64,000 nt of DNA from Epithemia pelagica (GCA_946965045.2 OX337241.1:248001-312000); one strand, 5' to 3'; numbered from the stretch's first letter, positions 9,765-54,968 are shown. A program made the numbers and translations. The notes: generated by a model not told the origin, from the sequence alone.

Positions 9765-10799
9765 GGTGGGGGTTTGTTTGATTTTGCTGGTTGGAACTTG
9801 GCGCAGGCTAAAAAATCTCAATTTTTCTCTCTCCTAGGAACCCATAAACCTCTGTGTGAAATATTGTTCGATGTGAAAAGAGCCCTGGAGAGCAGATTTG
9901 TGAATTTCATCAAATTTCACTGCAACGTCAGGCCACGTAGGCAGAAAGTGTGAAATGTGTGAAATTTCACGCTTGTTAAGACCAACCCTCAGGTCTTCGG
10001 ACATGGTTACACTACATAAACGAAAAAAAGGAAAGTGTCCCGGTGCCGCGCAGTCTAGTTTTCAACGGACCACTGCCGATCACTCTACAGTATAATAAAT
10101 TGTATTACTCTCACCTTGAATGTACTACGTTCCTTCGGGACGCGCAGACCCGTCCGGTACTGGAGAGTTTCCAGTGATCATGCAGTCCAGCTGGGGTCCC
10201 AGAAACATTGTACTGTAGCAGTCATAGTGCCTCGTTACGCAGTATTGAGATCCACCTCGTACGAACTACTCCATCTGTCAGGATTCAAATCATGGTTTTC
10301 GAAACACAATTATGTTATGCACGATTCCGCTCGGATGTAACGTTTCGCTTCGAGAATATGCCCAATACGTATCCCAACCTCGATCGGGGTACACTACAAT
10401 TTCAATATCTACAGTTTCGTGTGCTCGGTCGTAATTTTTTCTTATCTTTTATATTGTACAACATGAGGGAGGTAGTACTTTGCATGATACAGTGACATGG
10501 TCCTTTCGGACTTTTAACAAAGGCAATAAGTGATGGCAACTCCGCAAGTTGCGACCCCCCATGAATTATTCGTACAATTCATCGCCATCACATCATGGAT
10601 CATGGCAAGACTCTCACCGCAGCATATATTTTTTGGGTCAAGACCATCAACCAAGAACAACAACAGGTTTGCTTTCATTCTATTCTAGTCGTTCATTCCT
10701 TCCGTTCCATTGTATCGCATCTCGTTGGATTGCTCCACCGTTTTATCATCTTTACAAGCCAAAAACAGAATTCAAAGGCGATCCTACTAATAATACACC

Positions 10800-11876
10800 A
10801 TGGAGCAAGCATCCTCCTCGTCGTGGTACAGTCTCATGAATGAACATGCCTTGTCGATTCATCGACAACAAATGTGCAAGGCCATTTGGGCCATTGTGTT
10901 GGAACGCCAACGACAACCATGTCAAACAACAACTACTACTACTACGAATCCTCCTCGATTGGTGCAACGCGTCGAACAAGTCTTGTTGGAACATTCTTCC
11001 TCCTTGCAAGATTATTTGAATCGCACCACCTTGCGCAAACGGGTCCGCATGGCGACGTCCGGTGGATCGTCCTTTACCACTCTTGGCAGCCATCAAAGCA
11101 GCAGTAGCAGTTCCTCATCGAGCTGGGGAACCCAAGACACCTCTTGTTCCTCCTTGTCTGTCACCTCCGTTGGTACAGTGTCGCCAACACCAACATGTTC
11201 TTCCTTCATGGGCGCAACAACAACAACGACAACAACGCTCCAGAATCAATCTCCCGAAATTGTTCAAGCCGAACGACGCAAAATGACGTTGCAAATCTTC
11301 AAGTTTTTGGAACGACGCAAGCCCTCCAACAACAACAACGAACCCACGAGCAAACCAAGAGCCAATCACCACCACAAGAAGTTCTCCAAGAAAACGACTC
11401 GACAACCACACCCGTCTTGTAGTCGAACGCACAAGAAACCCAAGCATTGGCATCCTCCACGACAACAACAAGCACCACTACTAGTACAAGTACCACACTA
11501 CGAGCAACAACAAGTAGTAGTAGAAAAGGAAGAAGAAGAAGACGTGTCCATGCAAGAATCATCGGACCAAGGAGAAACAGAATCCTCCTCCTCCTCCTCG
11601 CCAGAACCACCTCAGCCAGCAGAGGAGAACCAGCAGGAACGACACATGCGTGCCACCTTGTTGAGTATGAGTCGCCATTGCGAAGTGTCCTTGTATCGAC
11701 AAGCCACGTCGCTGGAGGAATACAAGAATACGCAAACCTTGCAATCACGACTTCGACAGTTGCTCGATACGTGTCTCGCCCAACGCCATCCACAAGCAAC
11801 AACGACTCCACCACCATCACTACCAGTCAATCCTACCATTGCAACTACTACTACTGCGACGACAAACGGAACATGA
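10800..11876 (+). CDS. KIX-like (Med15/KIX_2-type) domain protein, low complexity (358 aa)
   Basis: Motifs RLVQRVEQVLLEHSSSLQDYLNRTTLRKRV and RHCEVSLYRQATSLEEYKNTQTLQSRLRQL resemble the KIX_2 E-x2-LY-x2-A-x-S-x3-Y-x4-TL-x2-RL pattern. Confidence 0.6.
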   Translation: MEQASSSSWYSLMNEHALSIHRQQMCKAIWAIVLERQRQPCQTTTTTTTNPPRLVQRVEQVLLEHSSSLQDYLNRTTLRKRVRMATSGGSSFTTLGSHQSSSSSSSSSWGTQDTSCSSLSVTSVGTVSPTPTCSSFMGATTTTTTTLQNQSPEIVQAERRKMTLQIFKFLERRKPSNNNNEPTSKPRANHHHKKFSKKTTRQPHPSCSRTHKKPKHWHPPRQQQAPLLVQVPHYEQQQVVVEKEEEEDVSMQESSDQGETESSSSSSPEPPQPAEENQQERHMRATLLSMSRHCEVSLYRQATSLEEYKNTQTLQSRLRQLLDTCLAQRHPQATTTPPPSLPVNPTIATTTTATTNGT

Positions 11877-22433: not shown

Positions 22434-23403
22434 GAGAGAGAAAAAGAATGAGTTGGCTTCTCTCTTTCGGACTTGGGTCTTTGACGTTGAGGTGCAAACA
22501 ATCGGAAGAATGTGATTGCTTCTTGATGTATACGGTTGTCTTGAAAGTTTAGTTCTGCAGTAGTAGGTGATGCCTTGGAGCTTCTGCTAATAACAGGACC
22601 GATTCGGAGGAGTATGATAATAAGGATAATAACCTTGGTTCTAACTGCCTTGGTCGTAATAATCGGTGTTCTGCGTCGTAGTCGTTAATGATCGTAGTGT
22701 TCGTTGTGTTGTTGTTCCAAAAGATCTCGTCCATTGCCATGCACCGGTCGAGAGGAGGGAAAAAAGAGGCTTTTTTCTTCTTCTTCTTCTAGCTCCAACA
22801 GGGGACGCCAAAAGCAAAACCGTATAGAGCAATAATAAGAATTCGATCCACAAACAGAGAGTATCAATCTCTCTCTCTCGATAACAGTAGCAAGAACAAC
22901 AACAACCAGACTGGAGACTTGAGAGAGAGTTCCAGAACAGCAAAACAAAAGGGGATTGATTCAAAACAGCAACGTCCCAAAAGGAATGCTTGCAAGCACA
23001 GAATCGTTCCAAAGATGAAAACAAGGAGGGGGGTCTTTCAAAACACCAAACAGATATGTGATGTCTCGTCGTTCTGCTTCTTTTGCCGACAAAGATCGCT
23101 GTCGATGGATCTTTTTTTGGCATCGGTCTCGTCTACTTTTTACATCATAGTGGTTTTCTGCCAAACTGATTGGACTGAGATGGCGCCGCACCCGGATTGC
23201 GGGTGGGGATGTAAGGAGCTATGATGGAAGGAGACGTTCGTGAATCGTCGCTTATTTCATAGTTATGCTACATCTAACAACCACCACAGAAATCTCTCGA
23301 CGCTATAAACTTTTCAGTATGTAAAAAATATGGAGTATAGAGTCCATGCATATTACGAGAGAGGTTTACGACTACGGTTCTCCTAGATTGTGGGATTGTT
23401 TGA

Positions 23404-24731
23404 TTAGGCGACGACGGAAGGAGCAGTCATGGCCACGGGCAAGACTTCGCCACTGGCCAAATCCAAGGGAAAGTTGTGAGCGTTACGTTCGTGCATGACT
23501 TCCATACCCAAATCGGCGCGGTTGATAATGTCGGCCCAGGTGTTGATGACACGGCCCTGAGAGTCAATCACGGCTTGGTTAAAGTTGAATCCGTTCAAGT
23601 TAAAGGCCATGGTCGAGACACCCATGGCAGTCAACCAGATACCAATCACGGGCCAGGCGGCCAAGAAAAAGTGCAAGGCACGCGAGTTGTTGAAAGACGC
23701 GTATTGGAAGATGAGACGACCAAAGTATCCGTGGGCGGCGACAATGTTGTAGGTTTCTTCTTCTTGACCAAACTTGTAACCGTAGTTGGTGGATTCACTT
23801 TCGGTGGTTTCACGAATCAAGGAGGAAGTCACCAAGGAACCATGCATGGCAGAAAAGAGGGATCCACCAAAGACACCAGCAACACCAGCCATGTGGAAGG
23901 GGTGCATCAAAATGTTGTGTTCGGCTTGAAACACCAACATAAAGTTAAAGGTTCCGGAGATACCAAGGGGCATACCATCGGAGAAGGATCCTTGTCCAAT
24001 GGGGTAGTTGAGGAAGACAGCAGTGGCTGCAGCAACAGGGGCCGAAAAGGCGGTAAAGATCCAAGGGCGCATACCCAAACGGTAGGAAAGTTCCCATTCA
24101 CGGCCCATGTAGGCGGCCACACCAGTCAAAAAGTGCAAGACAATCAATTGGTATTCACCACCATTGTACAACCATTCATCCACCGAAGCAGCTTCCCAGA
24201 TGGGGTACAAGTGCATACCGATGGCGTTGGAAGAGGGGACAACGGCACCCGAAATAATGTTGTTACCATACAACAAGGATCCAGCAACGGGTTCACGGAT
24301 TCCATCAATATCGACTGTGGTAAATCAACAATGTTAGTGGACTCATTTCTCTTGTGGTTATCATTTTTTAGTCAAGGAGCGCACATACCGGGAGGAGCAG
24401 CGATAAAGGCGGTGATGAAGCAAGTGGTGGCGGCGAGCAAGGTGGGGAACATGAGGGTTCCAAACCATCCAATGTAGAGGCGGTTTTCGGTACTGGTGAT
24501 CCAGTTGGAAAACTTTTCCCAGACAGTGGCAGTGTTGCGCTTGGCGACAGCGTTCGTGTCCAAAGAGGCAGCCTTCAATTGGAAATCGGTCTCGGCCTCC
24601 ACATTGGTAGGAACAAAGGCAACGGCCGAAGACGAGGAAGTACGGGCGTTGGTGTTCAAAGGAGCAGGTGCGGTGAAAGCATTGGCTTGAGAAGCCAAAA
24701 GAGTGGCAACAATGGCAGTGGCGAACTTCAT
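23404..24731 (-). CDS. psbA: Nucleus-encoded photosystem II reaction-centre protein D1 with bipartite plastid-targeting presequence; exons 24389-24731 and 23404-24314, 417 aa
   Basis: Spliced product is a 57-aa presequence plus a 360-aa D1. With offset 57, residues D61, E65, H118, Y161, D170, E189, H190, H198, H215, H252, S264, H272, H332, E333, H337, D342 and A344 are all in register. Presequence [22 protein letters not shown]. Intron GTATGT...CACTAAC...CACAG. Confidence 0.98.
24315..24388 (-). other. 74-nt phase-1 spliceosomal intron in psbA
   Basis: 5' GTATGT, branch point CACTAAC, 3' CACAG. Removal restores [14 protein letters not shown] (codon G|TC); the unspliced frame hits a stop. Confidence 0.96.
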
Positions 24732-24763: not shown

Positions 24764-24853
24764 TGTGAGAACGGACAGTTCAGGACCGTCCCTGCATTTT
24801 GAAGAGAGGGGAACCCAACTATACTCTGACTCTGATGAGGAACACGTACGTGT
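24764..24853 (-). promoter_or_regulatory. Candidate psbA core promoter: TCACA initiator-like motif and ACACGTACGTGT palindrome
   Basis: TCACA on the minus strand at 24764-24768, 33 nt upstream of the ATG. Perfect 12-bp palindrome with two ACGT cores at 24842-24853. Function is inferred. Confidence 0.3.
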
Positions 24854-38053: not shown

Positions 38054-38933
38054 CTAACCACTGGTGGCCCACATTCGCAGAGCATTCTCATAATTCCACA
38101 GGAGACACTTTTCCAGAATCTCAGCTGCTTCAACCGAGTACAAATCAGTTGGGGAGTTCGACCAACACAAGCTGAGATCAGACACACCGGGAATACCCAT
38201 GACGAGCGATAACACCCCATTGTCGGTCTCTTCTGTTACAAGTTTTAAACGTCTTCCAGTTGGATAGTGCAAAGCCACGTCGGCACCAGAGATGGTCCAC
38301 CTTCTGCATCTTGTCTGTCAAGAGCAGCGTTACTCCCCAGTCTAGAAAGCAAACCTTCACCAATATCGTTGACATTCAGGATCAACTGCAAAGGTATCTT
38401 GTAGCACACTTGACCGGCCACGTAGTTGTTTGATAGCCGTTTGGCGGCCGCAAAGGTCTGATGGCAAATGTTTGCTGTGTTTTCCGACGCTTTCCTCTTC
38501 CCCTCGCTGTTCCAGCGAAATTGATGTGGACATCTCTACTCAAAGCCAAACGATTATACTCCTGTTTGTCCAACCATTCGTAAATGCCTTTACACTTCGA
38601 GCTTGGGAAGATGTGTGCAGACTCAGGGTCCGCCAATACAAACGAAAGATCATTTTCGAATCGTTGAAAAACAGATGTGGGATCTCGCCTCGAGAGCAAG
38701 GTGACATCCACGGTAATGTCATCGTTTGTACAAACGTCGATCAACATATCAACAACAGGCGATCCCAGTTGTGCCTCGTCATTTTGCGCGACGTAATGTG
38801 TCTCTAATATATAGAAGTTCGTGTCAATGGGATAGCTGGGGACCATTATCGCAGTCAATTCGTTCACCACACTTCCCTCATTATTTGTAAGGACAAGTTG
38901 CCCCTTTTCTCCACTTTTGTCACACAGAACCAC
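38054..38933 (-). pseudogene. HNH endonuclease (HNH_2/Crinkler-type) fragment, 5'-truncated and frameshifted
   Basis: ESAHIFPSSKC...NRLALSRDVHINFAG matches the AHI.P...N.L.L...H..FD HNH_2 pattern. Coding-like sequence continues in two other frames (VCYKIPLQLILNV; EILEKCLLWNYENAL). No ATG start. Confidence 0.6.
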
Positions 38934-38950
38934 AACTAGTAGTCATACCT

Positions 38951-40048
38951 TTAACATCCATCGAAACAAGACGTTAGAAAGTCCCGAACGGATTCCGTTT
39001 TGACCCCCTGTATTGAGCCGAGTATTTCTTCTGTTGACATTGGCTTGACGGGTGATTCTATTTCTCCGCACATTTCCAGCAAAGTCTTGGCCAGCAACAA
39101 GTAATCAGTCTTTTTCTCAGCCAAAGGAGGTAAGTCTGAGGGGTAGTAGTTGCGTGTGCATTCTATGATTTCTTGTCCGATTGGCTTGGCTGCACCGTAG
39201 TCACCAAGGTAGCAATTTCCTTCTAGTAAGAAGACACTGGACGGCTTGAGATCCAAGTGGCAATAGCCATTCTTGTGCATGTGCTGAATGGCGCGCTTCA
39301 GCTGGTTGCCGAATTTCAACAGAACTGTTTCTGTCAGTGGAATTTTGCATTGAGCGAGTGTGATTTGGAAATGTTTCATCAGGATCCCTGACCGCGATCG
39401 AGCATACGGGACAGAGAGGTCGCCATTTTCATCTGTTATCTCAATCGTAGCGCTTTCGAAGTGTACGTGTTCGATGACAACAAGATTGTTTTTTTCGGCG
39501 TCCTCCATGATTTTTTCCATCACGCTTATCTCGTGGTCGATACTTTTGGGTGTAGATACCTTGAGTATCATCGGATACCCATCTCGGAACGCATGCAACA
39601 AGACAGCCTTGGAATCTGATACACGGAAAGGTTGAGCCACTGATATGCCTTGTTCACGGAGGACAATTTCTGTCGCTGATCGTGGGATTATCGACGCGGT
39701 GTAATAGAGATCGGCAGCAGCCACTGGTTCCACTATAAGGGGAATAGACGCCGCATAGTGCTTGATAATTTGCATCATAATCGGCTGAATAGGAGTGATT
39801 CCTTGCGCCAGCAATAAAGAACGAAAACGCTCTATCCCTTCACCTTGCCGCTGCTGCTGCTGTTGACCATGAAGCTGATCAATGGGTGGACCCAGCGTGT
39901 ACGTGCCGTTATGAACGAGGCAATTGTAGCTTTCCCGTACACCATCTTTCATTAAGCCCTTCACGCCTTCAGTCTTCAATAATTCGAGGTAGTCTTCTCG
40001 GTCGCTAATTTCCACGGCTCCAACGCTTTCAACATTGATCGTGATCAT
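38951..40048 (-). CDS. Divergent Ser/Thr protein kinase, copy 1 (365 aa from ATG 40048); catalytic-loop Asn replaced by Ser
   Basis: MILKV...HE (subdomains II-III), GYCHLDLKPSSVF, LGDYGAA, TDYLLLAKTL. Copy 2 has KPSN at the same site. Confidence 0.85.
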   Translation of the reverse strand: MITINVESVGAVEISDREDYLELLKTEGVKGLMKDGVRESYNCLVHNGTYTLGPPIDQLHGQQQQQRQGEGIERFRSLLLAQGITPIQPIMMQIIKHYAASIPLIVEPVAAADLYYTASIIPRSATEIVLREQGISVAQPFRVSDSKAVLLHAFRDGYPMILKVSTPKSIDHEISVMEKIMEDAEKNNLVVIEHVHFESATIEITDENGDLSVPYARSRSGILMKHFQITLAQCKIPLTETVLLKFGNQLKRAIQHMHKNGYCHLDLKPSSVFLLEGNCYLGDYGAAKPIGQEIIECTRNYYPSDLPPLAEKKTDYLLLAKTLLEMCGEIESPVKPMSTEEILGSIQGVKTESVRDFLTSCFDGC

Positions 40049-40209: not shown

Positions 40210-42484
40210 AATTTGCCCGAATGAGACAGAGGATCCCTGATCCATCCACCAGCACCAGGGGATTCTTGAAGGAAAACCCTGACGAGCCATTTCAAGTTGT
40301 TGTTTTTTGTTGAAGAGGTAGTTCCCCTCGTTGAGTATTAGATCCTTGTTCGCCAAACGAATAGGTGTGGCTGGCGGTTGGCGGTTAGCGAAACTTCTTT
40401 TTCGCGAAAGGCGCGCCTGTCGCCCCACCCGTCTGCCCATCGATCGTCGTGACGGAAAAGGCGATGATCCGAGAACATCTCCAGACGCATTGCCAATCAC
40501 CGCAGAAGCATCCTAAATCCTATTATGAAAGCTTTTGTGTCTGTGTCGGTAGGTGGATGATAATGATACTACTAGGATATAACATCATCTTCCATTCGAT
40601 CCATCCATCCACAATAGCATCATCATCATCATCAAGACAAAACACAAGATGACACAGAGCCAACACAGAAAAAGACTGAATGAAGCACGCCATTCTTCGG
40701 TCCGCGCAACGCATGGATTCGTCCGACAACGATCAAGGAGGGAGGACGACTACTGTGGTCGACGAAAACAAAATCAGGATCCCTATCATTACTCTTGTCG
40801 TGGGACCCATCCGCTGCATCATGACGACGGCCATGACAGGCAAGGGTGGTCGTCGTTGTCAGCAGACAAGAATCGTTGGATCCAGTGGCTGTTGCGAACT
40901 GCAACAAGAATTCGTTCTACACAACGACCGTTGCTGCAACGACAACCACCATCCAAGGATGAGAATTTCCATGACCAAAACGCTGTGTTCCAGACGTTGG
41001 CTGGTCCGCAACGGATGCGGCGGCGGTCTTGGAATTGGCACGGCATGTTTGTCACTCTAGTATTCTCCCTGGTGGTGGTGGTAGTCCATGGTTGGACGCC
41101 TACAATACGAATATCTCCTGGGAGAAGGACTCGAAGGATACAATGGATGTATTCCAGTGCCACTCCACGAGACGTTCTACCTCCAAACGACAATGACAAT
41201 GAGGTCTCACCCTCCACTGTCGTCGAGTCCTTTTCCTATGATTCGACTACCAATGCTTTGGATCGATATTATCATGCCGATATGGAACGCATTTTGAACA
41301 CCAAACGTACCATGTGGGAGCAACAGTTGCACGACACGAGACGGTCGCAAGACGACGACGACAATGATGATGACGACGACAAGTATGCACCCTTTGCTCC
41401 TTGGTTTGCTCGACACAAGTCGTCTCCTCGCCGAGCACCAGGCGACGGCAGAAACAGTCACATCCATAACGAGGATCGAACCCCACTATTGGACGACCAT
41501 ACCTTGAACGTTTTGGCCTGGATCCGACAATTGAATCGCAAACAACGACCACCTATTGTCACGCATGATTTTGATGGAGCCCAACGCGTCCATGAAATGT
41601 TGTTGGAATGGCAACAACGACAATTGCCAAACGAATGGCATGCGCTACAACAACAACAGCAACAGCAATGGTCGAGTGGCATGAAATCCTATGAAATTGT
41701 CATGCAAGCCTATTTGCAACGAGGACGATTGCGATGGTTGGGAACCGATCCTCACGATGATGTCTATCCGACCACTCCGAGTTTGGACGAGACGATTCAG
41801 GTCTTGTTTGATCCAGAGTTTTTGGTGGAAGACGACAAGACAAGAGAAGAAACTACCATGAATCTCCGCAAAGTGATTTGTGCCGCCGATGTGCTGCAGG
41901 ATTTGTATCACCAATGGCAATGGAATCATCCATCCCAGTCACGGCAGTATATTCGCAATCGCGAAACCACTGGAGTAATTGTAGACTCGGAACCCGGTTC
42001 GAATGCTACTACTAGTAGTAGTAGCAGCACGAGTGGTGTCCCGGAACCTCCCATGCCCAACAACGCGGTTCCCCTATTGTGGAATCCAGTGTCAGCCTGT
42101 TGGTTGGCCGGTCAGGCCGTCCGTGCCACTCAACGAGGCGGCCGGGAACGGAATTATGCCGAATGGGCCCTCGACTTTGTCCATGCCTTGCGAAACCATA
42201 CTCTTGCCACCAACAACAACGCCAAGATGCCGGTGGAAGCCTTGCTCCATGGGATTCATGCGGCTGCCTGGCATCAAGACATTTCGCATCCGACCACCGA
42301 TTCCACTCCGTCCATCCCAACCAGTACTACTACTTCCAGTGCGGAGGAGGAGAAGGAGGAGGAACGGACGGTCCATTATCTACAACCAGAGGAGGAAGGT
42401 GGGGTATTCTCCAAGAAGGAAACGAACGACAAGTACCATTGGGTCCATGCCATGTGGAATGAGCTGATTGCTCTGCTTCATCCC
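40210..42484. repeat. Segmental duplication (~2.3 kb) of 54116-56411: intergenic region plus 5' part of the PPR gene
   Basis: Near-identical sequence from aatttgcccgaatgag to gagctgatt(g/a)ctctgcttca in both copies. Confidence 0.97.
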
Positions 42485-42559
42485 GATGATATGATCACGA
42501 AGAATGAGACACTTTACTCGTACCTAATACGGTTTGGTACTCGACAATCTACTAGCTAG
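41045..42559 (+). pseudogene. 3'-truncated duplicate of the PPR gene: presequence and N-terminal region, no PPR repeats, novel 26-aa tail
   Basis: Matches ORF 54573-58394 up to about WNELIALL, then diverges into HPDDMITK...RQSTS and stops. Confidence 0.85.
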
Positions 42560-44113: not shown

Positions 44114-44267
44114 TTAGGTCTATATTCATTTGGATGGTTTGGACACTTTATTCAACATTCACAAATCGTTCAATCAATTTCTCCATGATAGCGATTCTTG
44201 TCCTCATTTCAGTCCCTCCTGGTCCACCCTCTTTTGTCACACAGAACCACAACTAGTAGTCATACCT

Positions 44268-45218
44268 TTAGCATCCATCGAAACAAGACGTTAGAAAGTC
44301 CCGAACGGATTCCGTTTTGACCCCCTGTATTGAGCCGAGTATTTCTTCTGTTGACATTGGCTTGACGGGTGATTCTATTTCTCCGTACATTTCCAGCAAA
44401 GTCTTGGCCAGCAACAAGTAATCAGTCTTTTTCTCAGCCAAAGGAGGTAAGTCTGAGGGGTAGTAGTTGCGTGTGCATTCTATGATTTCTTGTCCGATTG
44501 GCTGGGCTGCACCGTAGTCACCAAGGTAGCAATTTCCTTCTAGTAAGAAGACATTGGACGGTTTGAGATCCAAGTGGCAATAGCCATTCTTATGCATGTG
44601 CTGAATGGCGCGCTTCAGCTGGTTGCCGTATTTCAACAGAACTGTTTCTGTCAGTGGGATTTTGCATTGAGCGAGTGTGATTTGGAAATGTTTCATCAGG
44701 ATCCCTGACCGCAATCGAGCATACGGGACAGAGAGCTCGCCATTTTCATCTGTTATCTCAATCGTAGCGCTTTCGAAGTGTACGTGTTCGATGACAACAA
44801 GATTGTTTTTTTCGGCGTCCTCCATGATTTTTTCCCATCACACTTATCTCGTGGTCGATACTTTTGGGTGTAGATACCTTGAGTATCATCGGATAGGCAT
44901 CTCGCATTGCATGCAACAAGACAGCCTTGGACGGATCTGATGCACGGTAAGGTTGAGCAACTGATATGCCTTGATCACGGAGGACAATTTCTGTCGCTGA
45001 TCGTGGGATTATCGACGCGGTGTAGTAGAGATCGGCAGCAGCCACTGGTTTCACTATAAGGGGAATAGACGCCGCATAGTGCTTGATTAATTGCATCATA
45101 ATCGGCTCACTAGGAGTGATTCCTTGTGCCAGCAATAAAGAACGAAAACGCTCTATCCCTTCACCTTGCCGCTGCTGCTGCTGTTGACCATGAAGCTGAT
45201 CAATGGGTGGACCCAGCG
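44268..45218 (-). pseudogene. Protein kinase copy 2 (duplicate of 38915-39898), 5'-truncated with a +1 frameshift near 44835
   Basis: Near-identical to copy 1. tttttt-CCC-atca here versus tttttt-CC-atca in copy 1. Homology ends at cccagcgt (about 45218). Retains HLDLKPSN. Confidence 0.85.
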
Positions 45219-46135
45219 TTTGGTTATCCCAATCAACAAAACAATTTTCAATGGACGACAAACGATATCATTGTTGGATCGGTGATAGAACGAAGCAAGG
45301 TTTTCGATAAAGTCCCGAGTGAGAAATGAAAAGAGATTTGTTTTGTTAAATAAGCACGTAAATTAAAAAAAGATGATGTGAGGGCTTCAATTTGTTCATT
45401 CATTTATGCTGTCATGCGCAAATGATTGTTGCTGCTGAGGCAGTGTTGCTCAATACCAGCCTGTCCAGATAATTGATGAAAGAGGCAGAATGACAAGAAT
45501 CTTCTGCTTCTACGAAAAAGTGTTTTCCTCTCATCCTTGTCGTTTCTCTGCGGTTCTTTGCTTGCCTTGTCGGAGGATCTGTTTCCGTGGAATGGCACTG
45601 GGAGTTTGTAAGGGAGGAATATCTACCTAGGCGTGCCACGCGTGACGACTATAGTGTTGTTTTCCTTACTAGCGAGTAAAGAAAAGGACTCTTGTTGCAA
45701 AAATTGTGTGTCTACGGTGTTAGGTACTACGTCTTCGTTCCTTACTGTCATCGATGCGTTGAATCGTTGGTGGAGACGTTGTGTCACCAATTTGGGCGAC
45801 GAGATGTGTTAAGGACGGACCTGCCATCGTTCGTGGGATACCGCTGCCTCTAAGTATCTTCTGAGTCACTTAGGGCCATGGACCGTTATGACAATGGTCA
45901 TGGGATCCCGTCCTTAAGAACGACAATCGTTACATAGGCATTGTCAATCGTTACATAGGCATCGTCGCCTGGATCCATCGTCCGTCGTTTTGCGTTTTGT
46001 GAAAGGCGGTTCGATGATGCGTTGGGCCTAATGGAGTCATGAGGTTTGCGTCTGCGGTCCCCCAAGGTCCCCATCAGTGACATATGCCCGCATGTACAAT
46101 ATTCGAACACTCCCTCACGCAGCGTGAAAATCTGA

Positions 46136-49100
46136 CTACCAGCCCATAATACGCGTGCGATGCCGCTCGAACGTCTCTTTATCCAGTGCTTTGGTAAAGA
46201 TATCCGCGGTCTGCAACTCCGTATCGCAAGGGAGGATCGTAATCTCTTTCTTCTCGACATAGGACTTGAAATGAAATAGCTTGGTACAGAGGTATCGCGT
46301 GCGTGGTCGATACTTATAGACCGTAGCCAATTCGTAAGCTCCGTTATTGTCTTCAAAAGCTCGACAATGTACTCTGGGTTGTGTTGACAGAACAGGGAAG
46401 CCGAGTGATTTCATCTCTTTTGTAATGTTCATAAGTGGAATGACTGTACGCAATGAAGTAGAGAGGCTGATAATTTCCGCTTCCGTTGTGGACAGTGCAA
46501 TCTCGGACTGTAACTTTGATGCCCACACTATGGGACAACCTCCATAAAAGATGACATATCCGGAACGGGATCGGGCCATATCTGATCGTGGTATATCTGT
46601 CTTGTTGAAGTTGCCACAAAAATCGGCATCGGCATAAACGTCGAAATTTTCTTTGTCCTGTGGTTTGAGCACTAGTCCTCGTGACCGTGTACCAGCGAGG
46701 TAGCGCCCAATCTGCTTTACTGCTCGTCCGTGTACCTGCTTTGGATTCGCGGAAAAGCGTGCACATTGATGTACTGCGTAGGATATATCAGGTCGTGTAC
46801 TTTTCTCGAGGAAATTCAGTTTCCCGATGACCGAGCGATAGTTGAAGTGCCCATCAAAAGGGTCCCCATCATCATCGGCGCGCATCTTCACTGTGGTTGC
46901 TGCCGGCACGTCGCGAGTATTCGTGTCCGCTGGTAATCGTAGATCATCAAGGATAGCGTCGATCAAGCGAGTCTGGGAGAGGTGAAGATGTCCGGTCTCT
47001 TGTTTTGTAATATTGACCCCAAGAAAATCTTCTACCCCGTCTTCATATGTAATCTTAAGCCCAATGTCCTGCATCTGAGTGATAATGTCGTCGAGCTCTT
47101 GTGGATCAGGCCCTGTCAAGATGGAGTCATCTGTGTACAAGATATAGAGGCTGCGTCCTTTGTAGAAGACACATTCATCATGATCACTCTGTTTGAATCC
47201 CACTTGTTCCAATTGCTGTACTAGGTGTTTATTCCAGACACGCGCGGCCTGTTTCTGACCGTAGTAATTCCGTTTAATCTTGAGAACAAAATCTTCGGCT
47301 CGTTGTTTTCCGGTCGTGTCGAATGTAAACCCTCTAGGTGCCTCCATGTACATATCAGTTTCCGCCACGGCTTGAGTATAGGCGAGGACATAGTCTATCT
47401 GCTTCATCGCCCATCCTTGCGAAATAGCCGTCGTTAAGACATAGCGGACCACAGGCCATTGGACTACGGGAGCATAAGTCTCCCAATAGTTCACTCCTTT
47501 GGTCTGTCTTGATCCATCAAATGCCAAGCGTGACTTCCATTTATAGATTTCACCTGTCTGCAGTTTCCGCTTCCGGACACAACTCCATACTGCTCTAGTC
47601 ACATAGCTACCCGGTGGTATATCTTGTCGTCGAACCACTTCCCAGAGACCGTTTGCGGTGTGATCCTGGACCTCCTTTTGGGCAGCCTTTATAAATTCCA
47701 ATCGATCTGGTTGTCGCATGGCTTCGTGCCAATACATGACATCTGGATTTGCTTGGGCCTGTGCGGTCATGGAGATCAACCCAGGTAACGTCACTGCCAG
47801 CTCACCTAGAGGATCTAGGTCGTCCCCCAAGGAATCCATATAGTCTTGATATCGCATAGTTGGTTTGGGTTGTCGTTGTGACCTGCGGACTCCAAAGGCT
47901 CCCTCATTTGTCGGCTGGATTAGCTCTTCGTTGTCGATTGGTAACGGAACTATAGGTGGCTCCTCTAGGGTAGAATTGTGATCTACCTCCCTCATTTGTG
48001 AGGGTAGTTGTGAGTCACGTGTGTCGGTAGTGTGGTGATCTGGTTGGGACTGATCCATGGTTTTACCCTTGCGGAACCCGACCTTCTGCTGCCAGTAGGA
48101 GACAGGTTGTGCTTCCCCGAAACTACGTCGCATAGTCTCAAAACGGTCATCATATTGAACATGGAATTGGGGAGAAGATAAACCGGAGGACAATGAGAGA
48201 ATAAGCCCCACGGTTCTTGAATGTTGGGCAGAGTATCCCAAGAAGATACCAACCCGAGAGCGTTCGGACCATTTGGGAATCCCTTTTCCTGATTGTAGAG
48301 CATTGTCTAAGACATAACTTGGGCATCCAAATGTGTGCGCATGTCGCAAGTTGAATCGTGCTGGAGAACCAGAGAAGAGTTCCAAAGGCGTCGTTTTCTT
48401 ATGTTTCGCCATAGGTGCAGAGTTGAAGATATCCGATGCATAGCGTACTGCATAGGGCCAGAGGTTCGGAGTAATAGCAGAGGGCCATCGACGATGTGCA
48501 TGGAGTAGCATAGTCCGTGCTGAATCTTGTAGGTCCCTTATGCGCCTCTCAGCCATACCGCTCTGAAAATGCGCGTTGACGCCGCTGAACGTCAAGCGCT
48601 GTCCTTTGTCTCGCACTGCTTTGCGAAATTGGTTGTCAGCAAAAATGCCGTTGTCTGCATGATAGTGCATGATTGCGACCCCGTGCGTATCCGCCCATGC
48701 TTCAAATCGCTCCTTAGCTTCGATGGTATCTGCAGCCGACGTCGATCGTTGTAGGTGGACGTATCCTATACCAGAGTAGTGGTCCACGAAAACAGTCGCT
48801 ACCCGATATCTATCGCGTGTTGGAGTACCTCGTAAGTGGGCAATATATCCTGGTGTTGTTGATATTAGTTGGTCGACCGATACACATTGGCCTGGACGAG
48901 TCATAACATCCAGTGTACCCCTTGTACCTTTCACTCGCCATGGTTTCTTCGTCGCTTTCCCGTACATACAGGCTGTACATGCTGGAACAGCGCATGAACC
49001 AAGTCGCTTGGGCAATTCACCTCGTCGTGCCATTTCTTGAATCTTAGCAAATGACAGATGGCCGAGCCGATGATGAACGCGTAGGAGTTCAACCGTCGGG

Positions 49101-50065
49101 TTTTCGATTGGCACTTCTTCTTCATTGGGAATCACATGTACCACTTTTTCATCTTCGAAGAGAAAATCCGTGGTGATGGGCTGATCCCGTTGTGGAAAAT
49201 ACTGTTCGTTGTGCTCGTCATCCATGTCAAATTCTACATCGTTGGAATCTTGTTCGATCTGGGCGCTTGGTGAGTTCTCATTGATGCTTTCGTCATCCTC
49301 GATCAGATTCGCATGACTAACGATCGGTGGATTCTCATCTTCTTCCTCCGGTGTCGCGTGTACTTTGCAGCAGAAAGCATGGAACTTGAGCATACCGTTT
49401 GCAGTGTACAGTTGTCCCACGTTTGTCCCTCTTCGATTGAGTGGGATGGTTCTCGTATATTCGCGTTGGTTCCATTCGAGAATGATGTTGTCAGCTGTGG
49501 TGATGCAGCGAGTGCCATCTGGATTCGGCTTGTGGTCTTTGGCTACTTGTGCCCAGTGTTGGGGAGAGAAAAGTCTGTTGGAGGTCGATGGTATGTAGAA
49601 TGATCGAGGCAGGACGAATGTATGGATGGCACCGTTGTCGTCTTCGAAGTGCCACTTGATCGTCGTGGAGTAGATTTCCGTTTTGAACAATCCTGCAATG
49701 CCCTTGATCTTTCTTCTTACGGGCTGGATTGCTGTTATGCAGTCGGTGATATCGTTTGTGATAGACGATGTTGCACAGTTGTCAACAAACACGGGCTGGC
49801 TATCGGAGTCGAACTTGACTTGATGTGCTGCGGCTGGTTTGCCTGTTATCGGAGCTGCGAGTATTGTTGCCATGCATAACATTCGCATTGTTTGTCTATT
49901 CCATCTTGGTTTCTTTGTTTGTCTTCGTATCCTGTTGCTATTGCATGTTGGTGTTAGAAACCATAGCTTAGGCCGCAGACTCGTCTTGTCATCTTGGGAA
50001 GGGTTAGCCGACCTAACATCATCATCACTATATACTAGGACAGACATGTAGAGGATTGTTGTCAC
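46136..50065 (-). CDS. pol: Copia Pol polyprotein (protease, integrase, reverse transcriptase, RNase H); true start uncertain
   Basis: FVDNCATS (protease), HHRLGH...CTAC (HHCC zinc finger), SVDQL/ADNG/AERRIRDL (DDE), QIDYVLAY and LYTDDSI (RT), YADADF/STTEAE/FEDN/ADIFTK (RNase H). Confidence 0.95.
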   Translation of the reverse strand: MTTILYMSVLVYSDDDVRSANPSQDDKTSLRPKLWFLTPTCNSNRIRRQTKKPRWNRQTMRMLCMATILAAPITGKPAAAHQVKFDSDSQPVFVDNCATSSITNDITDCITAIQPVRRKIKGIAGLFKTEIYSTTIKWHFEDDNGAIHTFVLPRSFYIPSTSNRLFSPQHWAQVAKDHKPNPDGTRCITTADNIILEWNQREYTRTIPLNRRGTNVGQLYTANGMLKFHAFCCKVHATPEEEDENPPIVSHANLIEDDESINENSPSAQIEQDSNDVEFDMDDEHNEQYFPQRDQPITTDFLFEDEKVVHVIPNEEEVPIENPTVELLRVHHRLGHLSFAKIQEMARRGELPKRLGSCAVPACTACMYGKATKKPWRVKGTRGTLDVMTRPGQCVSVDQLISTTPGYIAHLRGTPTRDRYRVATVFVDHYSGIGYVHLQRSTSAADTIEAKERFEAWADTHGVAIMHYHADNGIFADNQFRKAVRDKGQRLTFSGVNAHFQSGMAERRIRDLQDSARTMLLHAHRRWPSAITPNLWPYAVRYASDIFNSAPMAKHKKTTPLELFSGSPARFNLRHAHTFGCPSYVLDNALQSGKGIPKWSERSRVGIFLGYSAQHSRTVGLILSLSSGLSSPQFHVQYDDRFETMRRSFGEAQPVSYWQQKVGFRKGKTMDQSQPDHHTTDTRDSQLPSQMREVDHNSTLEEPPIVPLPIDNEELIQPTNEGAFGVRRSQRQPKPTMRYQDYMDSLGDDLDPLGELAVTLPGLISMTAQAQANPDVMYWHEAMRQPDRLEFIKAAQKEVQDHTANGLWEVVRRQDIPPGSYVTRAVWSCVRKRKLQTGEIYKWKSRLAFDGSRQTKGVNYWETYAPVVQWPVVRYVLTTAISQGWAMKQIDYVLAYTQAVAETDMYMEAPRGFTFDTTGKQRAEDFVLKIKRNYYGQKQAARVWNKHLVQQLEQVGFKQSDHDECVFYKGRSLYILYTDDSILTGPDPQELDDIITQMQDIGLKITYEDGVEDFLGVNITKQETGHLHLSQTRLIDAILDDLRLPADTNTRDVPAATTVKMRADDDGDPFDGHFNYRSVIGKLNFLEKSTRPDISYAVHQCARFSANPKQVHGRAVKQIGRYLAGTRSRGLVLKPQDKENFDVYADADFCGNFNKTDIPRSDMARSRSGYVIFYGGCPIVWASKLQSEIALSTTEAEIISLSTSLRTVIPLMNITKEMKSLGFPVLSTQPRVHCRAFEDNNGAYELATVYKYRPRTRYLCTKLFHFKSYVEKKEITILPCDTELQTADIFTKALDKETFERHRTRIMGW

Positions 50066-50266
50066 TAGTAATATATAGATGAGCTGCTCGACCGTCTTGT
50101 AGAACAGCCCGAGGAATGACCTCGGGTCTCGTTGTCACTCTTCGTCAGAAGATTCTTCTTGGGCCGGTAGATCAGCTAGAGCACTCGCGAGGCGAAGGGC
50201 AGGAGTTGTACCATCATTGTTCTTCTCGGCATGAGCTAGATCATAGGCCTTCTTTTTCTCGCCGGT

Positions 50267-51376
50267 TCAGCCCCGTCCGTTGCACGTGTCGGAAGTGTGT
50301 TTCTTGTTAAGTGACCATTTTTCATGCCACTTACACCAATAGTACATTTTTCCGTTGACTTCTTTTACTTCTGGGCCTCCCTCATGTGGCCCAATGGTGA
50401 GCCACGATTCTTTTGCTGATTCTTTGGTCTTTTGCTCGCCCTGTTTGGATCCCTTGGTCGTGGACAGCGGGGCTGTTTTTCCTTTCTCCATCTTCTTGAC
50501 TTTGGCCTCAAGGGCAATAATCTTCTGGTCACGTTCGGATAGAGCCTGCCATTTCTTCGCTTCTACCAGGCCTTGGTACTTGAGACGGGCCCAATCCATG
50601 AGTTGCGTCGCCGAGAGATTCGGAGAATCTCCTTCTTCGTATGCGTTCTTCCGACGACGGATCATCTCCAAGAAGTTCTCATCATTCACAGTCTCATAAG
50701 CTTTGAAAAGGTTAGGGAGTAAGTCCAGCGTTCGTTCACCGCGGGCATGCAAACCTTGAAGAGTAGCCTTCACATAGGAGTTGAACTTGATGATGTCACC
50801 GTTGAAGTCTGCAATATGAATATGCAGATCGGACAAGCGCTGGCGAAGTACCATCACGGTCGCCTCGGTATCCACATACGCGAGGGAAATGATCACTTTG
50901 AGAAGGAGTGGACCACTGCCAACGTCGTCGATAATAAAGTCTTCGCGTCGTAGGTTTACTTGCGCCTTCGCATCTTCGTTGAGCGACGCCATCAAACACA
51001 TGTAGGACATATAGGAATTCTGAGAAATCCTGTTCTGTCCGATGAAACTATCGACGTAGGTGCGAACCTGGGCGAGCGAGACGCGACCGTAGGCTTGAGT
51101 CAAGAGATGCGTAGGTGCTGGTGGCGGTGCTGGTCCAGCTGCTGGAGGAACCACAATGTGTTCGGGAATGGAAAAGGTGCTGGTCCAAGACTGTTCGACG
51201 ATCCGATCTTGGAATGAGTCGAGAAACGTCTTCAGCCCTTCCGCGTGGAGATCGTAGAGATCACCACCGTCAAAGAGTCCAGTCGTTGCCTGCTTGTAGA
51301 GCTTTGCTCCAGCTGCCGTTGCAAAGTTGACGATGTTGTTCGCGTTTGCGTTAGCGGGAGAGATTGCGAAAGCCAT
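50267..51376 (-). CDS. gag: Copia Gag (369 aa to the first TGA; the frame continues 44 codons to a second TGA at 50135-50137)
   Basis: ATG just inside the 5' LTR. CoDi-like motifs GPLLLKVII, FNSYVK and LFKAY, and a C-terminal YYWCKWHEKW..HTSDTC zinc knuckle. Confidence 0.88.
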   Translation of the reverse strand: MAFAISPANANANNIVNFATAAGAKLYKQATTGLFDGGDLYDLHAEGLKTFLDSFQDRIVEQSWTSTFSIPEHIVVPPAAGPAPPPAPTHLLTQAYGRVSLAQVRTYVDSFIGQNRISQNSYMSYMCLMASLNEDAKAQVNLRREDFIIDDVGSGPLLLKVIISLAYVDTEATVMVLRQRLSDLHIHIADFNGDIIKFNSYVKATLQGLHARGERTLDLLPNLFKAYETVNDENFLEMIRRRKNAYEEGDSPNLSATQLMDWARLKYQGLVEAKKWQALSERDQKIIALEAKVKKMEKGKTAPLSTTKGSKQGEQKTKESAKESWLTIGPHEGGPEVKEVNGKMYYWCKWHEKWSLNKKHTSDTCNGRG

Positions 51377-52039
51377 GGCAGACGATGGACGTGTGCTGTC
51401 TAAAGCGCAGAGGAAGCGTGTTGTTTTCCTTACTAGCGAGTAAAGAAAAGGACTCTTGTTGCAAAAATTGTGTGTCTACGGTGTTAGGTACTACGTCTTC
51501 GTTCCTTACTGTCATCGATGCGTTGAATCGTTGGTGGAGACGTTGTGTCACCAATTTGGGCGACGAGATGTGTTAAGGACGGACCTGCCATCGTTCGTGG
51601 GATACCGCTGCCTCTAAGTATCTTCTGAGTCACTTAGGGCCATGGACCGTTATGACAATGGTCATGGGATCCCGTCCTTAAGAACGACAATCGTTACATA
51701 GGCATTGTCAATCGTTACATAGGCATCGTCGCCTGGATCCATCGTCCGTCGTTTTGCGTTTTGTGAAAGGCGGTTCGATGATGCGTTGGGCCTAATGGAG
51801 TCATGAGGTTTGCGTCTGCGGTCCCCCAAGGTCCCCATCAGTGACATATGCCCGCATGTACAATATTCGAACACTATAGATGAACGCTTAAGGGAGGACG
51901 TCGACAATGCAAAACATCTACGTGTCACTCAAAGCATGAGACCCTGTTCTAGTTTACCATGTCCGATCTTCAGACCGAAACTCGAATGCTTTGCGCCATG
52001 AAGTTTACCACGCCATTGATCGCCATGCTCATCCAACAT

Positions 52040-54078: not shown

Positions 54079-54968
54079 GGCGCCACTTACAGAAAGTTGA
54101 GGTTGCCGTGTGGGGAATTTGCCCGAATGAGACAGAGGATCCCTTATCCATCCACCAGCACCAGGGTATTCTTGGAGGAAAACGCCGCAGTCCTCGTCTC
54201 CGACGAGCCATTTCAAGTTGTTGTTTTTTGTTGAAGAGGTAGTTCCCCTCGTTGAGTATTAGATCCTTGTTCGCCAAACGAATAGGTGTGGCTGGCGGTT
54301 GGCGGTTAGCGAAACTTCTTTTTCGCGAAAGGCGCGCCTGTGGCCCCACCCGTCTGCCCATCGATCGTCGTGACGGAAAAGGCGATGATCCGAGAACATC
54401 TCCAGACGCATTGCCAATCACCGCAGAAGCCATCCTAAAGATCCTATTATGAAAGCTTTTGTGTCTGTGTCGGTAGGTGGATGATAATGATACTACTAGG
54501 ATATAACATCATCTTCCATTCGATCCATCCATCCACAATAGCATCATCATCATCATCAAGACAAAACACAAGATGACACAGAGCCAACACAGAAAAAGAC
54601 TGAATGAAGCACGCCATTCTTCGGTCCGCGCAACGCATGGATTCGTCCGACAACGATCAAGGAGGGAGGACGACTACTGTGGTCGACGAAAACAAAATCA
54701 GGATCCCTATCATTACTCTTGTCGTGGGACCCATCCGCTGCATCATGACGACGGCCATGACAGGCAAGGGTGGTCGTCGTTGTCAGCAGACAAGAATCGT
54801 TGGATCCAGTGGCTGTTGCGAACTGCAACAAGAATTCGTTCTACACAACGACCGTTGCTGCAACGACAACCACCATCCAAGGATGAGAATTTCCATGACC
54901 AAAACGCTGTGTTCCAGACGTTGGCTGGTCCGCAACGGATGCGGCGGCGGTCTTGGAATTGGCACGGC

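What the first reader, a model, noticed from the sequence alone, without database searches (positions are those of the whole stretch)
24561..24731. Acquired bipartite ER-signal plus transit peptide replaces the native D1 N-terminus
Seen: [57 protein letters not shown]. This is a basic residue, a hydrophobic core, A-x-A cleavage, +1 Phe (ANA|FTAP, an ASAFAP-type motif), then a Ser/Thr/Ala-rich transit-like segment. The stromal D1 residues 1-13 (canonically MTATLERRES..L) are remodelled to [13 protein letters not shown]. Established: signal plus +1 aromatic is the route across the four membranes of diatom complex plastids. Inference: the presequence may have been recruited from another plastid-targeted nuclear gene, and mature D1 must insert into thylakoids post-translationally rather than co-translationally.
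Basis: partly seen in the sequence, partly recalled or inferred. Interest (0 to 1): 0.85.

Follow-up and report, generated by a model that had tools for sequence, protein, structure and literature searches.

The report
Plastid-import leader on nuclear D1 gene
A diatom nuclear gene encodes the core photosystem II protein D1, normally made only inside chloroplasts, and carries in front of it a conserved import leader (signal peptide plus transit peptide) shared by dozens of related diatom genes, which makes a textbook "never-transferred" gene a natural test case for organelle gene transfer.

Summary
Window 24561-24731 (minus strand) encodes the quoted 57 residues in frame with a two-exon, nuclear-style, full-length D1 gene of 417 aa.

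The leader is not a chance feature. It aligns with the leaders of 38 other N-extended D1 proteins from raphid pennate diatoms (Epithemia, Nitzschia, Pseudo-nitzschia, Amphora, Seminavis, Entomoneis). These proteins form one clade next to plastid-encoded D1, and the leader is under purifying selection (dN/dS about 0.15).

- **Added, not replaced.** The leader sits in front of the native N-tail. Residues 58-70 still align one-to-one with plastid D1 residues 1-13.
- **Only residues 19-38 look like a transit peptide.** They contain no acidic residues, are rich in Ser/Thr and net positive, and end in a conserved motif that fits the published diatom stromal-peptidase site. Residues 39-57 are an acidic, length-variable linker ending in a second conserved motif.
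- **No donor gene was found.** Neither a profile search of 1.84 billion proteins nor a word-index search of a 5.8-billion-cluster collection found one.

Ten full-text searches found no paper describing a natural nuclear psbA. The scan had already noted a second, truncated copy elsewhere in this genome.

Localisation, the cleavage sites and the 5' end of the transcript in this organism remain untested.

The parts
24678..24731 (-). Signal peptide, residues 1-18 (M-K, hydrophobic core, A-N-A at -3 to -1).
   Evidence: Read directly. In the family the signal peptide is 17-18 aa, with -1 Ala in 39/39 and -3 small in 39/39. dN/dS against E. clementina is 0.10-0.12.
24618..24677 (-). Transit peptide proper, residues 19-38. 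It starts with the invariant F19 (F-T-A-P) and ends S-A-V-A just before F39. This is the predicted stromal processing site.
   Evidence: In all 39 family members this segment has no acidic residues. It is 33% Ser+Thr, has mean net charge +2.2 and is 15-30 aa long. It ends in the conserved S-S-A-L-[N/A/K/S] motif followed by F-x-P. These properties match the measured diatom transit peptides and cleavage consensus in PMC3774753.
24561..24617 (-). Acidic linker, residues 39-57. It begins with the invariant F39-x-P41 and ends in the conserved L-x-A-[A/S]-[S/T]-L motif. It is either an N-terminal extension of mature D1 or a second removable segment.
   Evidence: In the family this segment is 13% D/E, has mean net charge -1.5 and is 10-28 aa long. 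F39 is invariant; P41, L52 and L57 are kept in at least 90% of members.
24522..24560 (-). Retained but diverged native D1 N-tail, residues 58-70, equivalent to plastid D1 residues 1-13.
   Evidence: Same length and register as plastid D1 up to Trp14, with T2, R8 and A11 kept. It has the highest dN of any exon-1 segment, about 0.4-0.5.
24389..24521 (-). Rest of exon 1: D1 from Trp14 through helix A to Pro57, plus the first base of codon 58.
   Evidence: Pfam Photo_RC match. Zero or one non-synonymous change against E. clementina.
24315..24388 (-). Spliceosomal intron: 74 nt, GT-AG, phase 1, with an ACTAAC branch-site-like element.
   Evidence: Removing it gives an uninterrupted 417-aa D1. E. 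clementina copies have an intron at the same position and phase; Nitzschia inconspicua does not. DNA contigs of organism A span it.
23404..24314 (-). Exon 2: D1 residues 58-344, a 16-aa C-terminal tail and the stop codon.
   Evidence: Pfam Photo_RC, E = 4e-75. All checked cofactor ligands are kept. The C-terminal tail resembles that of plastid and cyanobacterial D1. A poly-A metatranscriptome contig covers 23343-23570.

Best explanation
Residues 1-57 are a working plastid-import leader placed in front of a complete, nucleus-encoded D1.

Shown here:
- The gene is nuclear. It has a spliceosomal intron, nuclear codon usage and eukaryotic neighbours.
- The D1 part is intact.
- The leader was acquired once, in the ancestor of a D1 clade spread across raphid pennate diatoms, and has been kept by selection.

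Inferred mechanism, in order:
1. The 18-residue signal peptide takes the precursor co-translationally into the ER lumen, which is continuous with the outermost plastid membrane.
2. Signal peptidase cuts after A-N-A and exposes F19.
3. The 20-residue, acid-free, Ser/Thr-rich transit peptide starting with that Phe carries the protein across the remaining three membranes.
4. The stromal peptidase most likely cuts after residue 38 (S-A-V-A | F-V-P).
5. This leaves a D1 with a roughly 19-residue acidic extension plus the diverged native tail. Alternatively, a second cut at A-S-L-D | T would give an N-terminus at the position of canonical Thr2.
6. The imported five-helix protein must then be inserted into thylakoids after translation. 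This differs from plastid-made D1, which is inserted while being translated.

The less hydrophobic helix A (V35T and I50T, fixed in the clade) fits passage through the ER translocon without arrest.
For: - Sequence and gene model.
- Nuclear context: the flanking genes are an EF-Tu-family GTPase and a RING protein, and a copia retroelement and a PPR gene lie further along the window. Codon usage matches the neighbours, with TTG as the main Leu codon and no TTA. DNA contigs of organism A run from the coding sequence into both flanks and across the intron at even depth.
- Family: 39 N-extended D1 proteins have alignable leaders. Named sources are Epithemia clementina, Nitzschia inconspicua (on a 3.5-Mb contig between eukaryotic genes), Nitzschia sp. 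RCC80, Pseudo-nitzschia australis, Amphora coffeiformis, Entomoneis sp. and Seminavis robusta. Several are complete ORFs from MMETSP transcriptomes, so orthologous transcripts include the leader.
- One clade: SH-aLRT 99, next to plastid-encoded D1 of diatom type. One of those plastid proteins, P0033, lies in a plastid gene neighbourhood.
- Ligands kept: Y161, D170, E189, H190, H198, H215, H272, H332, E333, H337, D342 and A344.
- Leader statistics and motifs match the measured Thalassiosira transit peptides and cleavage consensus in PMC3774753.
- dN/dS of 0.15 for the leader.
- Helix A mean hydrophobicity is 1.71, against 2.17 in plastid and cyanobacterial D1.
- Engineered nuclear D1 with a transit peptide raises D1 abundance in rice (PMC10458752).
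Against: - There is no localisation or N-terminal proteomic data for any member.
- No RNA evidence exists for the 5' end or the splice junction in this organism. The RNA runs laid covered only 23343-24170.
- SignalP, ASAFind and HECTAR could not be run.
- At the predicted stromal site the window has Val, not the usual Leu, at -2. Only 3 of 39 members do.
- The residue after the predicted cut is an invariant Phe, whereas the published consensus favours Ala, Ser or Met.
- Whether a five-helix protein can pass the ER translocon unarrested is assumed, not shown.
Confidence: 0.82

Rival explanations
1. The whole stretch 19-57 is one long transit peptide, removed near L57/D58, so mature nuclear D1 starts about where plastid D1 does.
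For: - The motif A-[A/S]-[S/T]-L-[D/S/A/G] at 53-58 is as conserved as the first site (L57 in 38/39).
- It also fits the rule Ala/Ser at -3, Leu at -2, small or charged at -1.
- In the window, a cut at A-S-L-D | T puts the new N-terminus at the Thr2 equivalent.
- A 39- to 40-residue transit peptide lies within the published 12-42 range.
Against: - Residues 39-57 are 13% acidic across the family, against under 1% in measured diatom transit peptides.
- In most members the residue after this site is Pro (24/39), a poor position for a cut.
- The residues that follow are not net negative in the window.
Confidence: 0.35
2. The leader was taken from another nuclear gene for a plastid protein, by exon shuffling or recombination.
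For: - This is a common route for transferred genes (general knowledge).
- Language-model features of residues 1-57 resemble the N-termini of small plastid-targeted proteins of red-lineage algae. The scores of 0.64-0.78 are below the level that counts as more than a lead.
Against: - A leader-only profile searched against 1.84 billion representatives gave 16 hits. Fourteen are fragments of the same nuclear-D1 family and two are repeat proteins.
- The word search returned only E. clementina paralogues.
- Nothing similar lies elsewhere in the window.
- No intron lies at the leader/D1 junction in the window, E. clementina or N. inconspicua.
- The acquisition is old, so a donor signal may simply have decayed.
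Confidence: 0.15
3. The extension is not used. The gene is an inactive nuclear copy of plastid DNA, or translation starts further downstream.
For: - There is no RNA evidence for the 5' end in this organism.
Against: - The reading frame is intact, an intron is present, codon usage is nuclear and all ligands are kept.
- The leader is under purifying selection and conserved across seven or more named taxa.
- Exon 1 has no internal ATG at the D1 start, because canonical Met1 is replaced by Asp.
Confidence: 0.03

Closest known systems
Bipartite (ASAFAP-type) presequences of nucleus-encoded plastid proteins in diatoms, e.g. FCP light-harvesting proteins and extrinsic PSII subunits
   Same: An 18-residue signal peptide, Ala at -1, Phe at +1, an F-x-x-P context, and an acid-free, Ser/Thr-rich, net-positive transit peptide of about 20 residues ending in an Ala-Leu-small motif.
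   Different: - The cargo is the five-helix reaction-centre protein D1.
- A conserved acidic 10-28-residue segment with an invariant second Ala | Phe-x-Pro follows the transit peptide.
- The residue after the predicted stromal cut is Phe rather than Ala, Ser or Met.
Plastid-encoded D1 (psbA) of diatoms
   Same: 93-94% identity over exon 2. All cofactor ligands, Glu130 and the C-terminal processing tail are kept. The N-tail has the same length up to Trp14.
   Different: - It is encoded in the nucleus, with an intron and nuclear codon usage.
- Met1 is replaced, and 57 residues are added in front.
- The N-tail is free to vary.
- Clade-fixed changes are C18S, V35T, I50T and V91M.
- Plastid psbA is reported in all diatom plastomes (PMC12412971), so this is probably an additional copy.
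Engineered nuclear psbA with an RbcS transit peptide in Arabidopsis, tobacco and rice
   Same: D1 is made in the cytosol behind a transit peptide and is reported to raise D1 abundance (PMC10458752).
   Different: The engineered case is man-made, uses a primary plastid with two membranes, needs no signal peptide, and uses a transit peptide borrowed from a known donor.
Nuclear transfers of hydrophobic mitochondrial core subunits (cox2 in legumes, cox3 in chlorophycean algae). Recalled from memory, not checked here.
   Same: A membrane core subunit moved to the nucleus, gained a presequence and lost hydrophobicity in its first helix.
   Different: A different organelle and import machinery. In those cases the organelle copy was lost.

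Membership tests
Diatom bipartite plastid-targeting presequence (ASAFAP type) | N-terminal signal peptide with a basic n-region, a hydrophobic h-region, and small residues at -3 and -1. | tested here: met
   K2; residues 3-13 have mean Kyte-Doolittle 2.26; A-N-A at -3 to -1. In the family -1 is Ala in 39/39 and -3 is A/S/T/C in 39/39. No SignalP run was possible.
Diatom bipartite plastid-targeting presequence (ASAFAP type) | Phe, Tyr, Trp or Leu immediately after the signal-peptide cut. | tested here: met
   F19, invariant in 39/39. The requirement is stated in PMC3774753.
Diatom bipartite plastid-targeting presequence (ASAFAP type) | Transit peptide of 12-42 aa, Ser/Thr-rich, almost free of Asp/Glu, net positive. 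| tested here: met
   Residues 19-38: 20 aa, 7 Ser/Thr, 0 acidic, +1. Family values: 0 acidic residues, 33% Ser+Thr, mean +2.2, compared with the published values. Residues 39-57 do not meet this feature.
Diatom bipartite plastid-targeting presequence (ASAFAP type) | Stromal-peptidase site: Ala/Ser at -3, Leu at -2, small or charged at -1, then Ala/Ser/Met and a net-negative start. | tested here: inconclusive
   Family values at site 1: Ala 29/39 at -3, Leu 33/39 at -2, N/A/K/S at -1. The window has A-V-A. The next residue is an invariant Phe, which is atypical. A second candidate site lies at 54-58.
Diatom bipartite plastid-targeting presequence (ASAFAP type) | Demonstrated delivery of a reporter to the plastid stroma. 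| not testable with these tools
   Needs GFP fusions in a transformable diatom.
Photosystem II D1 (PsbA, Pfam PF00124) | Photo_RC domain over the full length. | tested here: met
   E = 4e-75 for exon 2 and a weaker match for the end of exon 1. Exon 2 is 93-98% identical to D1 proteins.
Photosystem II D1 (PsbA, Pfam PF00124) | Ligands of the Mn cluster, TyrZ, P680, non-haem iron and the QB site, plus the Ala344 processing site. | tested here: met
   All 22 positions checked are identical to plastid D1 in the window. A 16-aa C-terminal tail follows Ala344.
Photosystem II D1 (PsbA, Pfam PF00124) | Encoded in the plastid genome (true of every previously described photosynthetic eukaryote, as far as found here). 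| tested here: not met
   GT-AG intron, nuclear neighbours, nuclear codon usage, and contigs bridging into the flanks.
Inactive nuclear insert of plastid DNA (NUPT) | Plastid-like base composition, no intron, decay of the reading frame. | tested here: not met
   GC3 of 0.61, an intron, an intact frame, and dN near 0 in the D1 part.

The most novel reading that the evidence does not exclude
After the transit peptide is cut at residue 38, nuclear D1 keeps a conserved acidic N-terminal extension. This extension begins with an invariant Phe-x-Pro and ends in L-x-A-A-S-L.

It is proposed to be a dedicated signal that lets a fully made five-helix reaction-centre protein be sorted to thylakoids and assembled into photosystem II after translation. 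It could also serve as a longer stromal handle for the FtsH protease in D1 turnover.

Raphid pennate diatoms would then run a second, nucleus-controlled supply line for D1 alongside the plastid gene. That would be a natural counter-example to the view that reaction-centre genes must stay in the organelle.
Probability: 0.3. Interest if true: 0.9.

Novelty: new variant of a known kind. Interest (0 to 1): 0.8.

Why it matters
D1 is the standard example of a gene that stays in the chloroplast. Two explanations are usually given:
- It is too hydrophobic to import.
- Its synthesis must be controlled on site by the redox state of the organelle (the CoRR idea).

A natural D1 encoded in the nucleus, carrying an import leader and conserved across a large diatom group, would show that import of this protein is possible across four membranes. 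It would also give a system in which both explanations can be tested directly.

The leader is the part that makes this work. Knowing where it is cut, and what the conserved extra segment does, would show how a five-helix core subunit can be inserted after translation. That is also relevant to efforts to supply D1 from the nucleus in crops.

Tried and rejected
- **Reads.** The two best runs of organism A behave as DNA: even depth over the intron and flanks. The metatranscriptome contigs cover only 23343-24170. So neither the splice junction nor the 5' end could be checked in RNA.
- **Donor search.** I tried a leader-only profile against 1.84 billion representatives, a word search with the E. 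clementina leader, tblastn of the leader against the window and the protein atlas (scores under 0.8, leads only). None gave a donor.
- **Literature.** Ten full-text searches found no paper on a natural nuclear psbA. The Epithemia genome preprint uses PsbA only as a blot control. Subscription journals are not covered.
- **Plastid psbA DNA.** DNA for a codon comparison could not be fetched because the sample file was too large.
- **Frame error.** The first Pfam call used the wrong frame for exon 2 and was repeated correctly.
- **C-terminal tail.** I had expected from memory that the C-terminal tail would be a nuclear novelty. The data show it resembles plastid and cyanobacterial tails, so I dropped that idea.
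- **Rejected readings.** A lumen-targeting (tripartite) signal is rejected: residues 39-57 have no twin-Arg and no hydrophobic stretch. Targeting to the Epithemia nitrogen-fixing endosymbiont is rejected because the family also occurs in diatoms without one.
- **Not run.** I did not run a structure prediction, because the window's spliced protein has no single reference.

Full report
**What is there**

On the minus strand, ATG 24731 opens a gene of two exons: 24731-24389 and 24314-23404. They are separated by a 74-nt GT-AG intron in phase 1 that contains an ACTAAC element. The spliced product is 417 aa.

- An in-frame TGA lies 51 nt upstream, so no longer reading frame exists.
- The remainder is a full-length D1. 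Pfam Photo_RC scores E = 4e-75 for exon 2.
- All 22 checked ligand and functional positions are identical to plastid D1. These include TyrZ, the Mn-cluster ligands, His198, His215, His272, Ser264 and Ala344.
- The 16-residue C-terminal tail is of the ordinary plastid and cyanobacterial kind.

**The gene is nuclear**

- The genes flanking it are an EF-Tu-family GTPase and a RING-finger protein. A copia-type retroelement and a PPR protein lie further along the window.
- Codon usage matches the flanking genes: TTG is the main Leu codon, TTA is absent, and GC3 is 0.61.
- In two runs of the source organism that behave as DNA, contigs run from the coding sequence into both flanks and across the intron at even depth.
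- Depth inside the coding sequence rises two- to four-fold, and an alternative 3' flank appears at 23400. Both point to further paralogues.
I could not inspect it.

**A family, not a singleton**

A search with exon 2 returned many D1 proteins of 403-460 aa with N-terminal extensions.

- Thirty-eight of the 120 listed hits carry an extension that aligns with the window's from Met1 to the D1 core, making 39 with the window.
- Named sources are Epithemia clementina (at least six copies, some in tandem), Nitzschia inconspicua, Nitzschia sp. RCC80, Pseudo-nitzschia australis, Amphora coffeiformis, Entomoneis sp. CCMP467 and Seminavis robusta.
- The N. inconspicua gene sits on a 3.5-Mb contig between an oxidosqualene-cyclase-like gene and a DUF1499 gene (a RasGEF-like gene lies just beyond), and has its own introns.
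- Several members are complete ORFs from MMETSP transcriptomes. In those species the transcript therefore includes the leader and is spliced.
- In a tree of the D1 core, all extended forms make one clade (SH-aLRT 99). The single exception in labelling, P0051, is a member whose start was mis-called.
- That clade sits next to diatom-type plastid D1. One of those plastid proteins lies in a plastid gene neighbourhood.
- Plastid psbA is reported in all diatom plastomes (PMC12412971), so the nuclear gene is probably an additional copy.
- The intron after codon 114 is at the same site and phase in E. clementina and is absent in N. inconspicua. Metagenomic gene calls that read on into "…AAPPGK…" show it in further relatives.

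**Anatomy of the leader**

Across the 39 sequences the leader splits into four segments.

| Segment | Window residues | Family length | Acidic residues | Other properties |
|---|---|---|---|---|
| Signal peptide | 1-18 | 17-18 aa | 5.3% | -1 Ala 39/39; -3 always A/S/T/C; next residue Phe 39/39, mostly followed by T-[V/A]-P |
| Transit peptide | 19-38 | 15-30 aa (mean 21.7) | none in any member | 33% Ser+Thr; mean net charge +2.2 |
| Acidic linker | 39-57 | 10-28 aa | 13% | mean net charge -1.5; ends in L-x-A-[A/S]-[S/T]-L (L57 in 38/39) |
| Native N-tail | 58-70 | 10-19 aa | 17.6% | mean net charge -0.5; 13 residues before Trp14 in the window |

- **Transit peptide.** It ends in S-S-A-L-[N/A/K/S], followed by an invariant Phe and a near-invariant Pro two residues on. 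N-terminal proteomics of Thalassiosira pseudonana (PMC3774753) gave these values: 12-42 aa with a mean of 20, 18% Ser and 14% Thr, 0.3% Asp and 0.6% Glu, and mean charge +2.6. The cleavage consensus was Ala/Ser at -3, Leu at -2 and small or charged at -1, followed by a net-negative start. The match to those values is close. The window has Val at -2, as do 3 of 39 members. The Phe after the cut is unusual.
- **Native N-tail.** In the window it aligns gap-free with plastid residues 1-13 and keeps T2, R8 and A11. The native N-terminus is therefore retained behind the leader, with Met1 replaced by Asp. It has not been replaced.

**Selection**

Against three E. clementina copies, synonymous sites are saturated (dS of 1.1 or more). 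Results by segment:

| Segment | dN/dS or dN |
|---|---|
| Whole leader (1-57) | dN/dS 0.15-0.16 |
| Signal peptide | dN/dS about 0.1 |
| Transit peptide | dN/dS 0.2-0.27 |
| Linker | dN/dS about 0.15 |
| D1 core of exon 1 | 0-1 non-synonymous changes |
| N-tail (58-70) | dN about 0.4-0.5, the highest |

My reading, as an inference, is that the constraints acting on the start of the plastid gene do not apply once the gene is nuclear. Such constraints could include translation start or handling of the nascent chain.

**Origin of the leader**

The leader is homologous throughout the clade, so it was acquired once, before these raphid lineages split.

- A profile of leaders only, with no D1 residues, was searched against 1.84 billion representative proteins. 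It gave 16 hits. Fourteen are fragments or mis-called models of the same nuclear D1 family, each continuing into the D1 N-terminus. Two are repeat proteins.
- A word-index search with the E. clementina leader, using the 5.8-billion-cluster collection, found only its own paralogues.
- No intron lies between leader and D1 in the three genomes examined.
- The recruitment idea is therefore unsupported. It is not excluded either, given the age of the event.

**How it most likely works**

Steps 1-3 follow the established route for diatom plastid proteins (summarised in PMC3774753). They are inferred here from sequence.

1. Co-translational entry into the ER.
2. Signal-peptidase cut before F19.
3. 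Phe-dependent passage of the next three membranes.
4. A stromal cut after residue 38 (my preferred site, about even odds). A cut at A-S-L-D | T, alone or as a second step, would place the new N-terminus at the Thr2 equivalent.
5. Insertion of the finished protein into thylakoids.

Plastid-made D1 is inserted during translation (textbook knowledge, not tested here).

Clade-fixed V35T and I50T lower helix A hydrophobicity from a mean of 2.17 to 1.75, and to 1.71 in the window. This fits a need to avoid arrest in the ER translocon.

Engineered nuclear D1 with a transit peptide is reported to raise D1 abundance in rice (PMC10458752), so import of D1 as such is feasible.

**What remains open**

- Localisation.
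- The true cleavage site or sites.
- The role of the conserved linker, with its second Ala | Phe-x-Pro.
- The transcript start in this organism.
- The physiological role beside the plastid copy.

Only the 3' end (23343-23570) was seen in a poly-A metatranscriptome.

**Novelty**

Ten full-text searches found no description of a natural nucleus-encoded D1. A 2023 review states that D1 is chloroplast-encoded (PMC10640588).

Public annotations already name two members: "protein D1" in Seminavis and "photosystem II qb protein psbA" in N. inconspicua. The sequences themselves are therefore not new. Their nuclear, leader-bearing nature seems not to have been discussed in the papers I could search.

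The targeting mechanism is of a known kind. The cargo and the extra conserved segment are the new variant.

Noticed in passing
window 24780-24797 (minus strand): An ATG 66 nt upstream of the start codon is followed by an in-frame TGA at -51. This would be a five-codon upstream ORF if the transcript starts further upstream.
   Followed up: no
window 23400 and 23900-24100: In the organism's DNA runs, depth inside the D1 coding sequence is two to four times that of the flanks. An alternative 3' flank also joins at 23400. The same alternative flank appears in a marine metatranscriptome, so a paralogue with another 3' UTR exists and is probably expressed.
   Followed up: partly
window 45654-51717: A copia-type retroelement: a 1309-aa ORF at 46139-50065 on the minus strand, with gag-pre-integrase and RVT_2 domains. 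It is flanked by 300-nt direct repeats that are 100% identical (45654-45953 and 51418-51717). They look like LTRs of a recent insertion.
   Followed up: partly
window 40281-41946 vs 54202-55876; 38911-39913 vs 44228-45234: Near-identical (93-100%) direct repeats about 13.9 kb and 5.3 kb apart. The first pair overlaps the start of a PPR-repeat ORF (54573-58391) and a 636-aa ORF without a Pfam match (40649-42559). This suggests a recent segmental duplication.
   Followed up: no
L002:3105-4533 and 10001-11432; L003:10001-11410: Epithemia clementina carries at least six nuclear D1 genes, two of them 7 kb apart in tandem. They share the window's intron after codon 114/115 and have a second intron near codon 303-305 that the window lacks.
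   Followed up: partly
window 24389-24521 and exon 2: The substitutions C18S, V35T, I50T and V91M are fixed in the nuclear clade. The window and its closest relatives also have P→E at about D1 residue 111, V145T and V159N, which lower the hydrophobicity of helices A-C.
   Followed up: partly
window 24522-24560: The D1 N-tail is well conserved in plastid-encoded D1 but is the fastest-evolving part of the nuclear gene (dN about 0.4-0.5). This hints that its conservation in plastids reflects constraints tied to plastid expression.
   Followed up: partly
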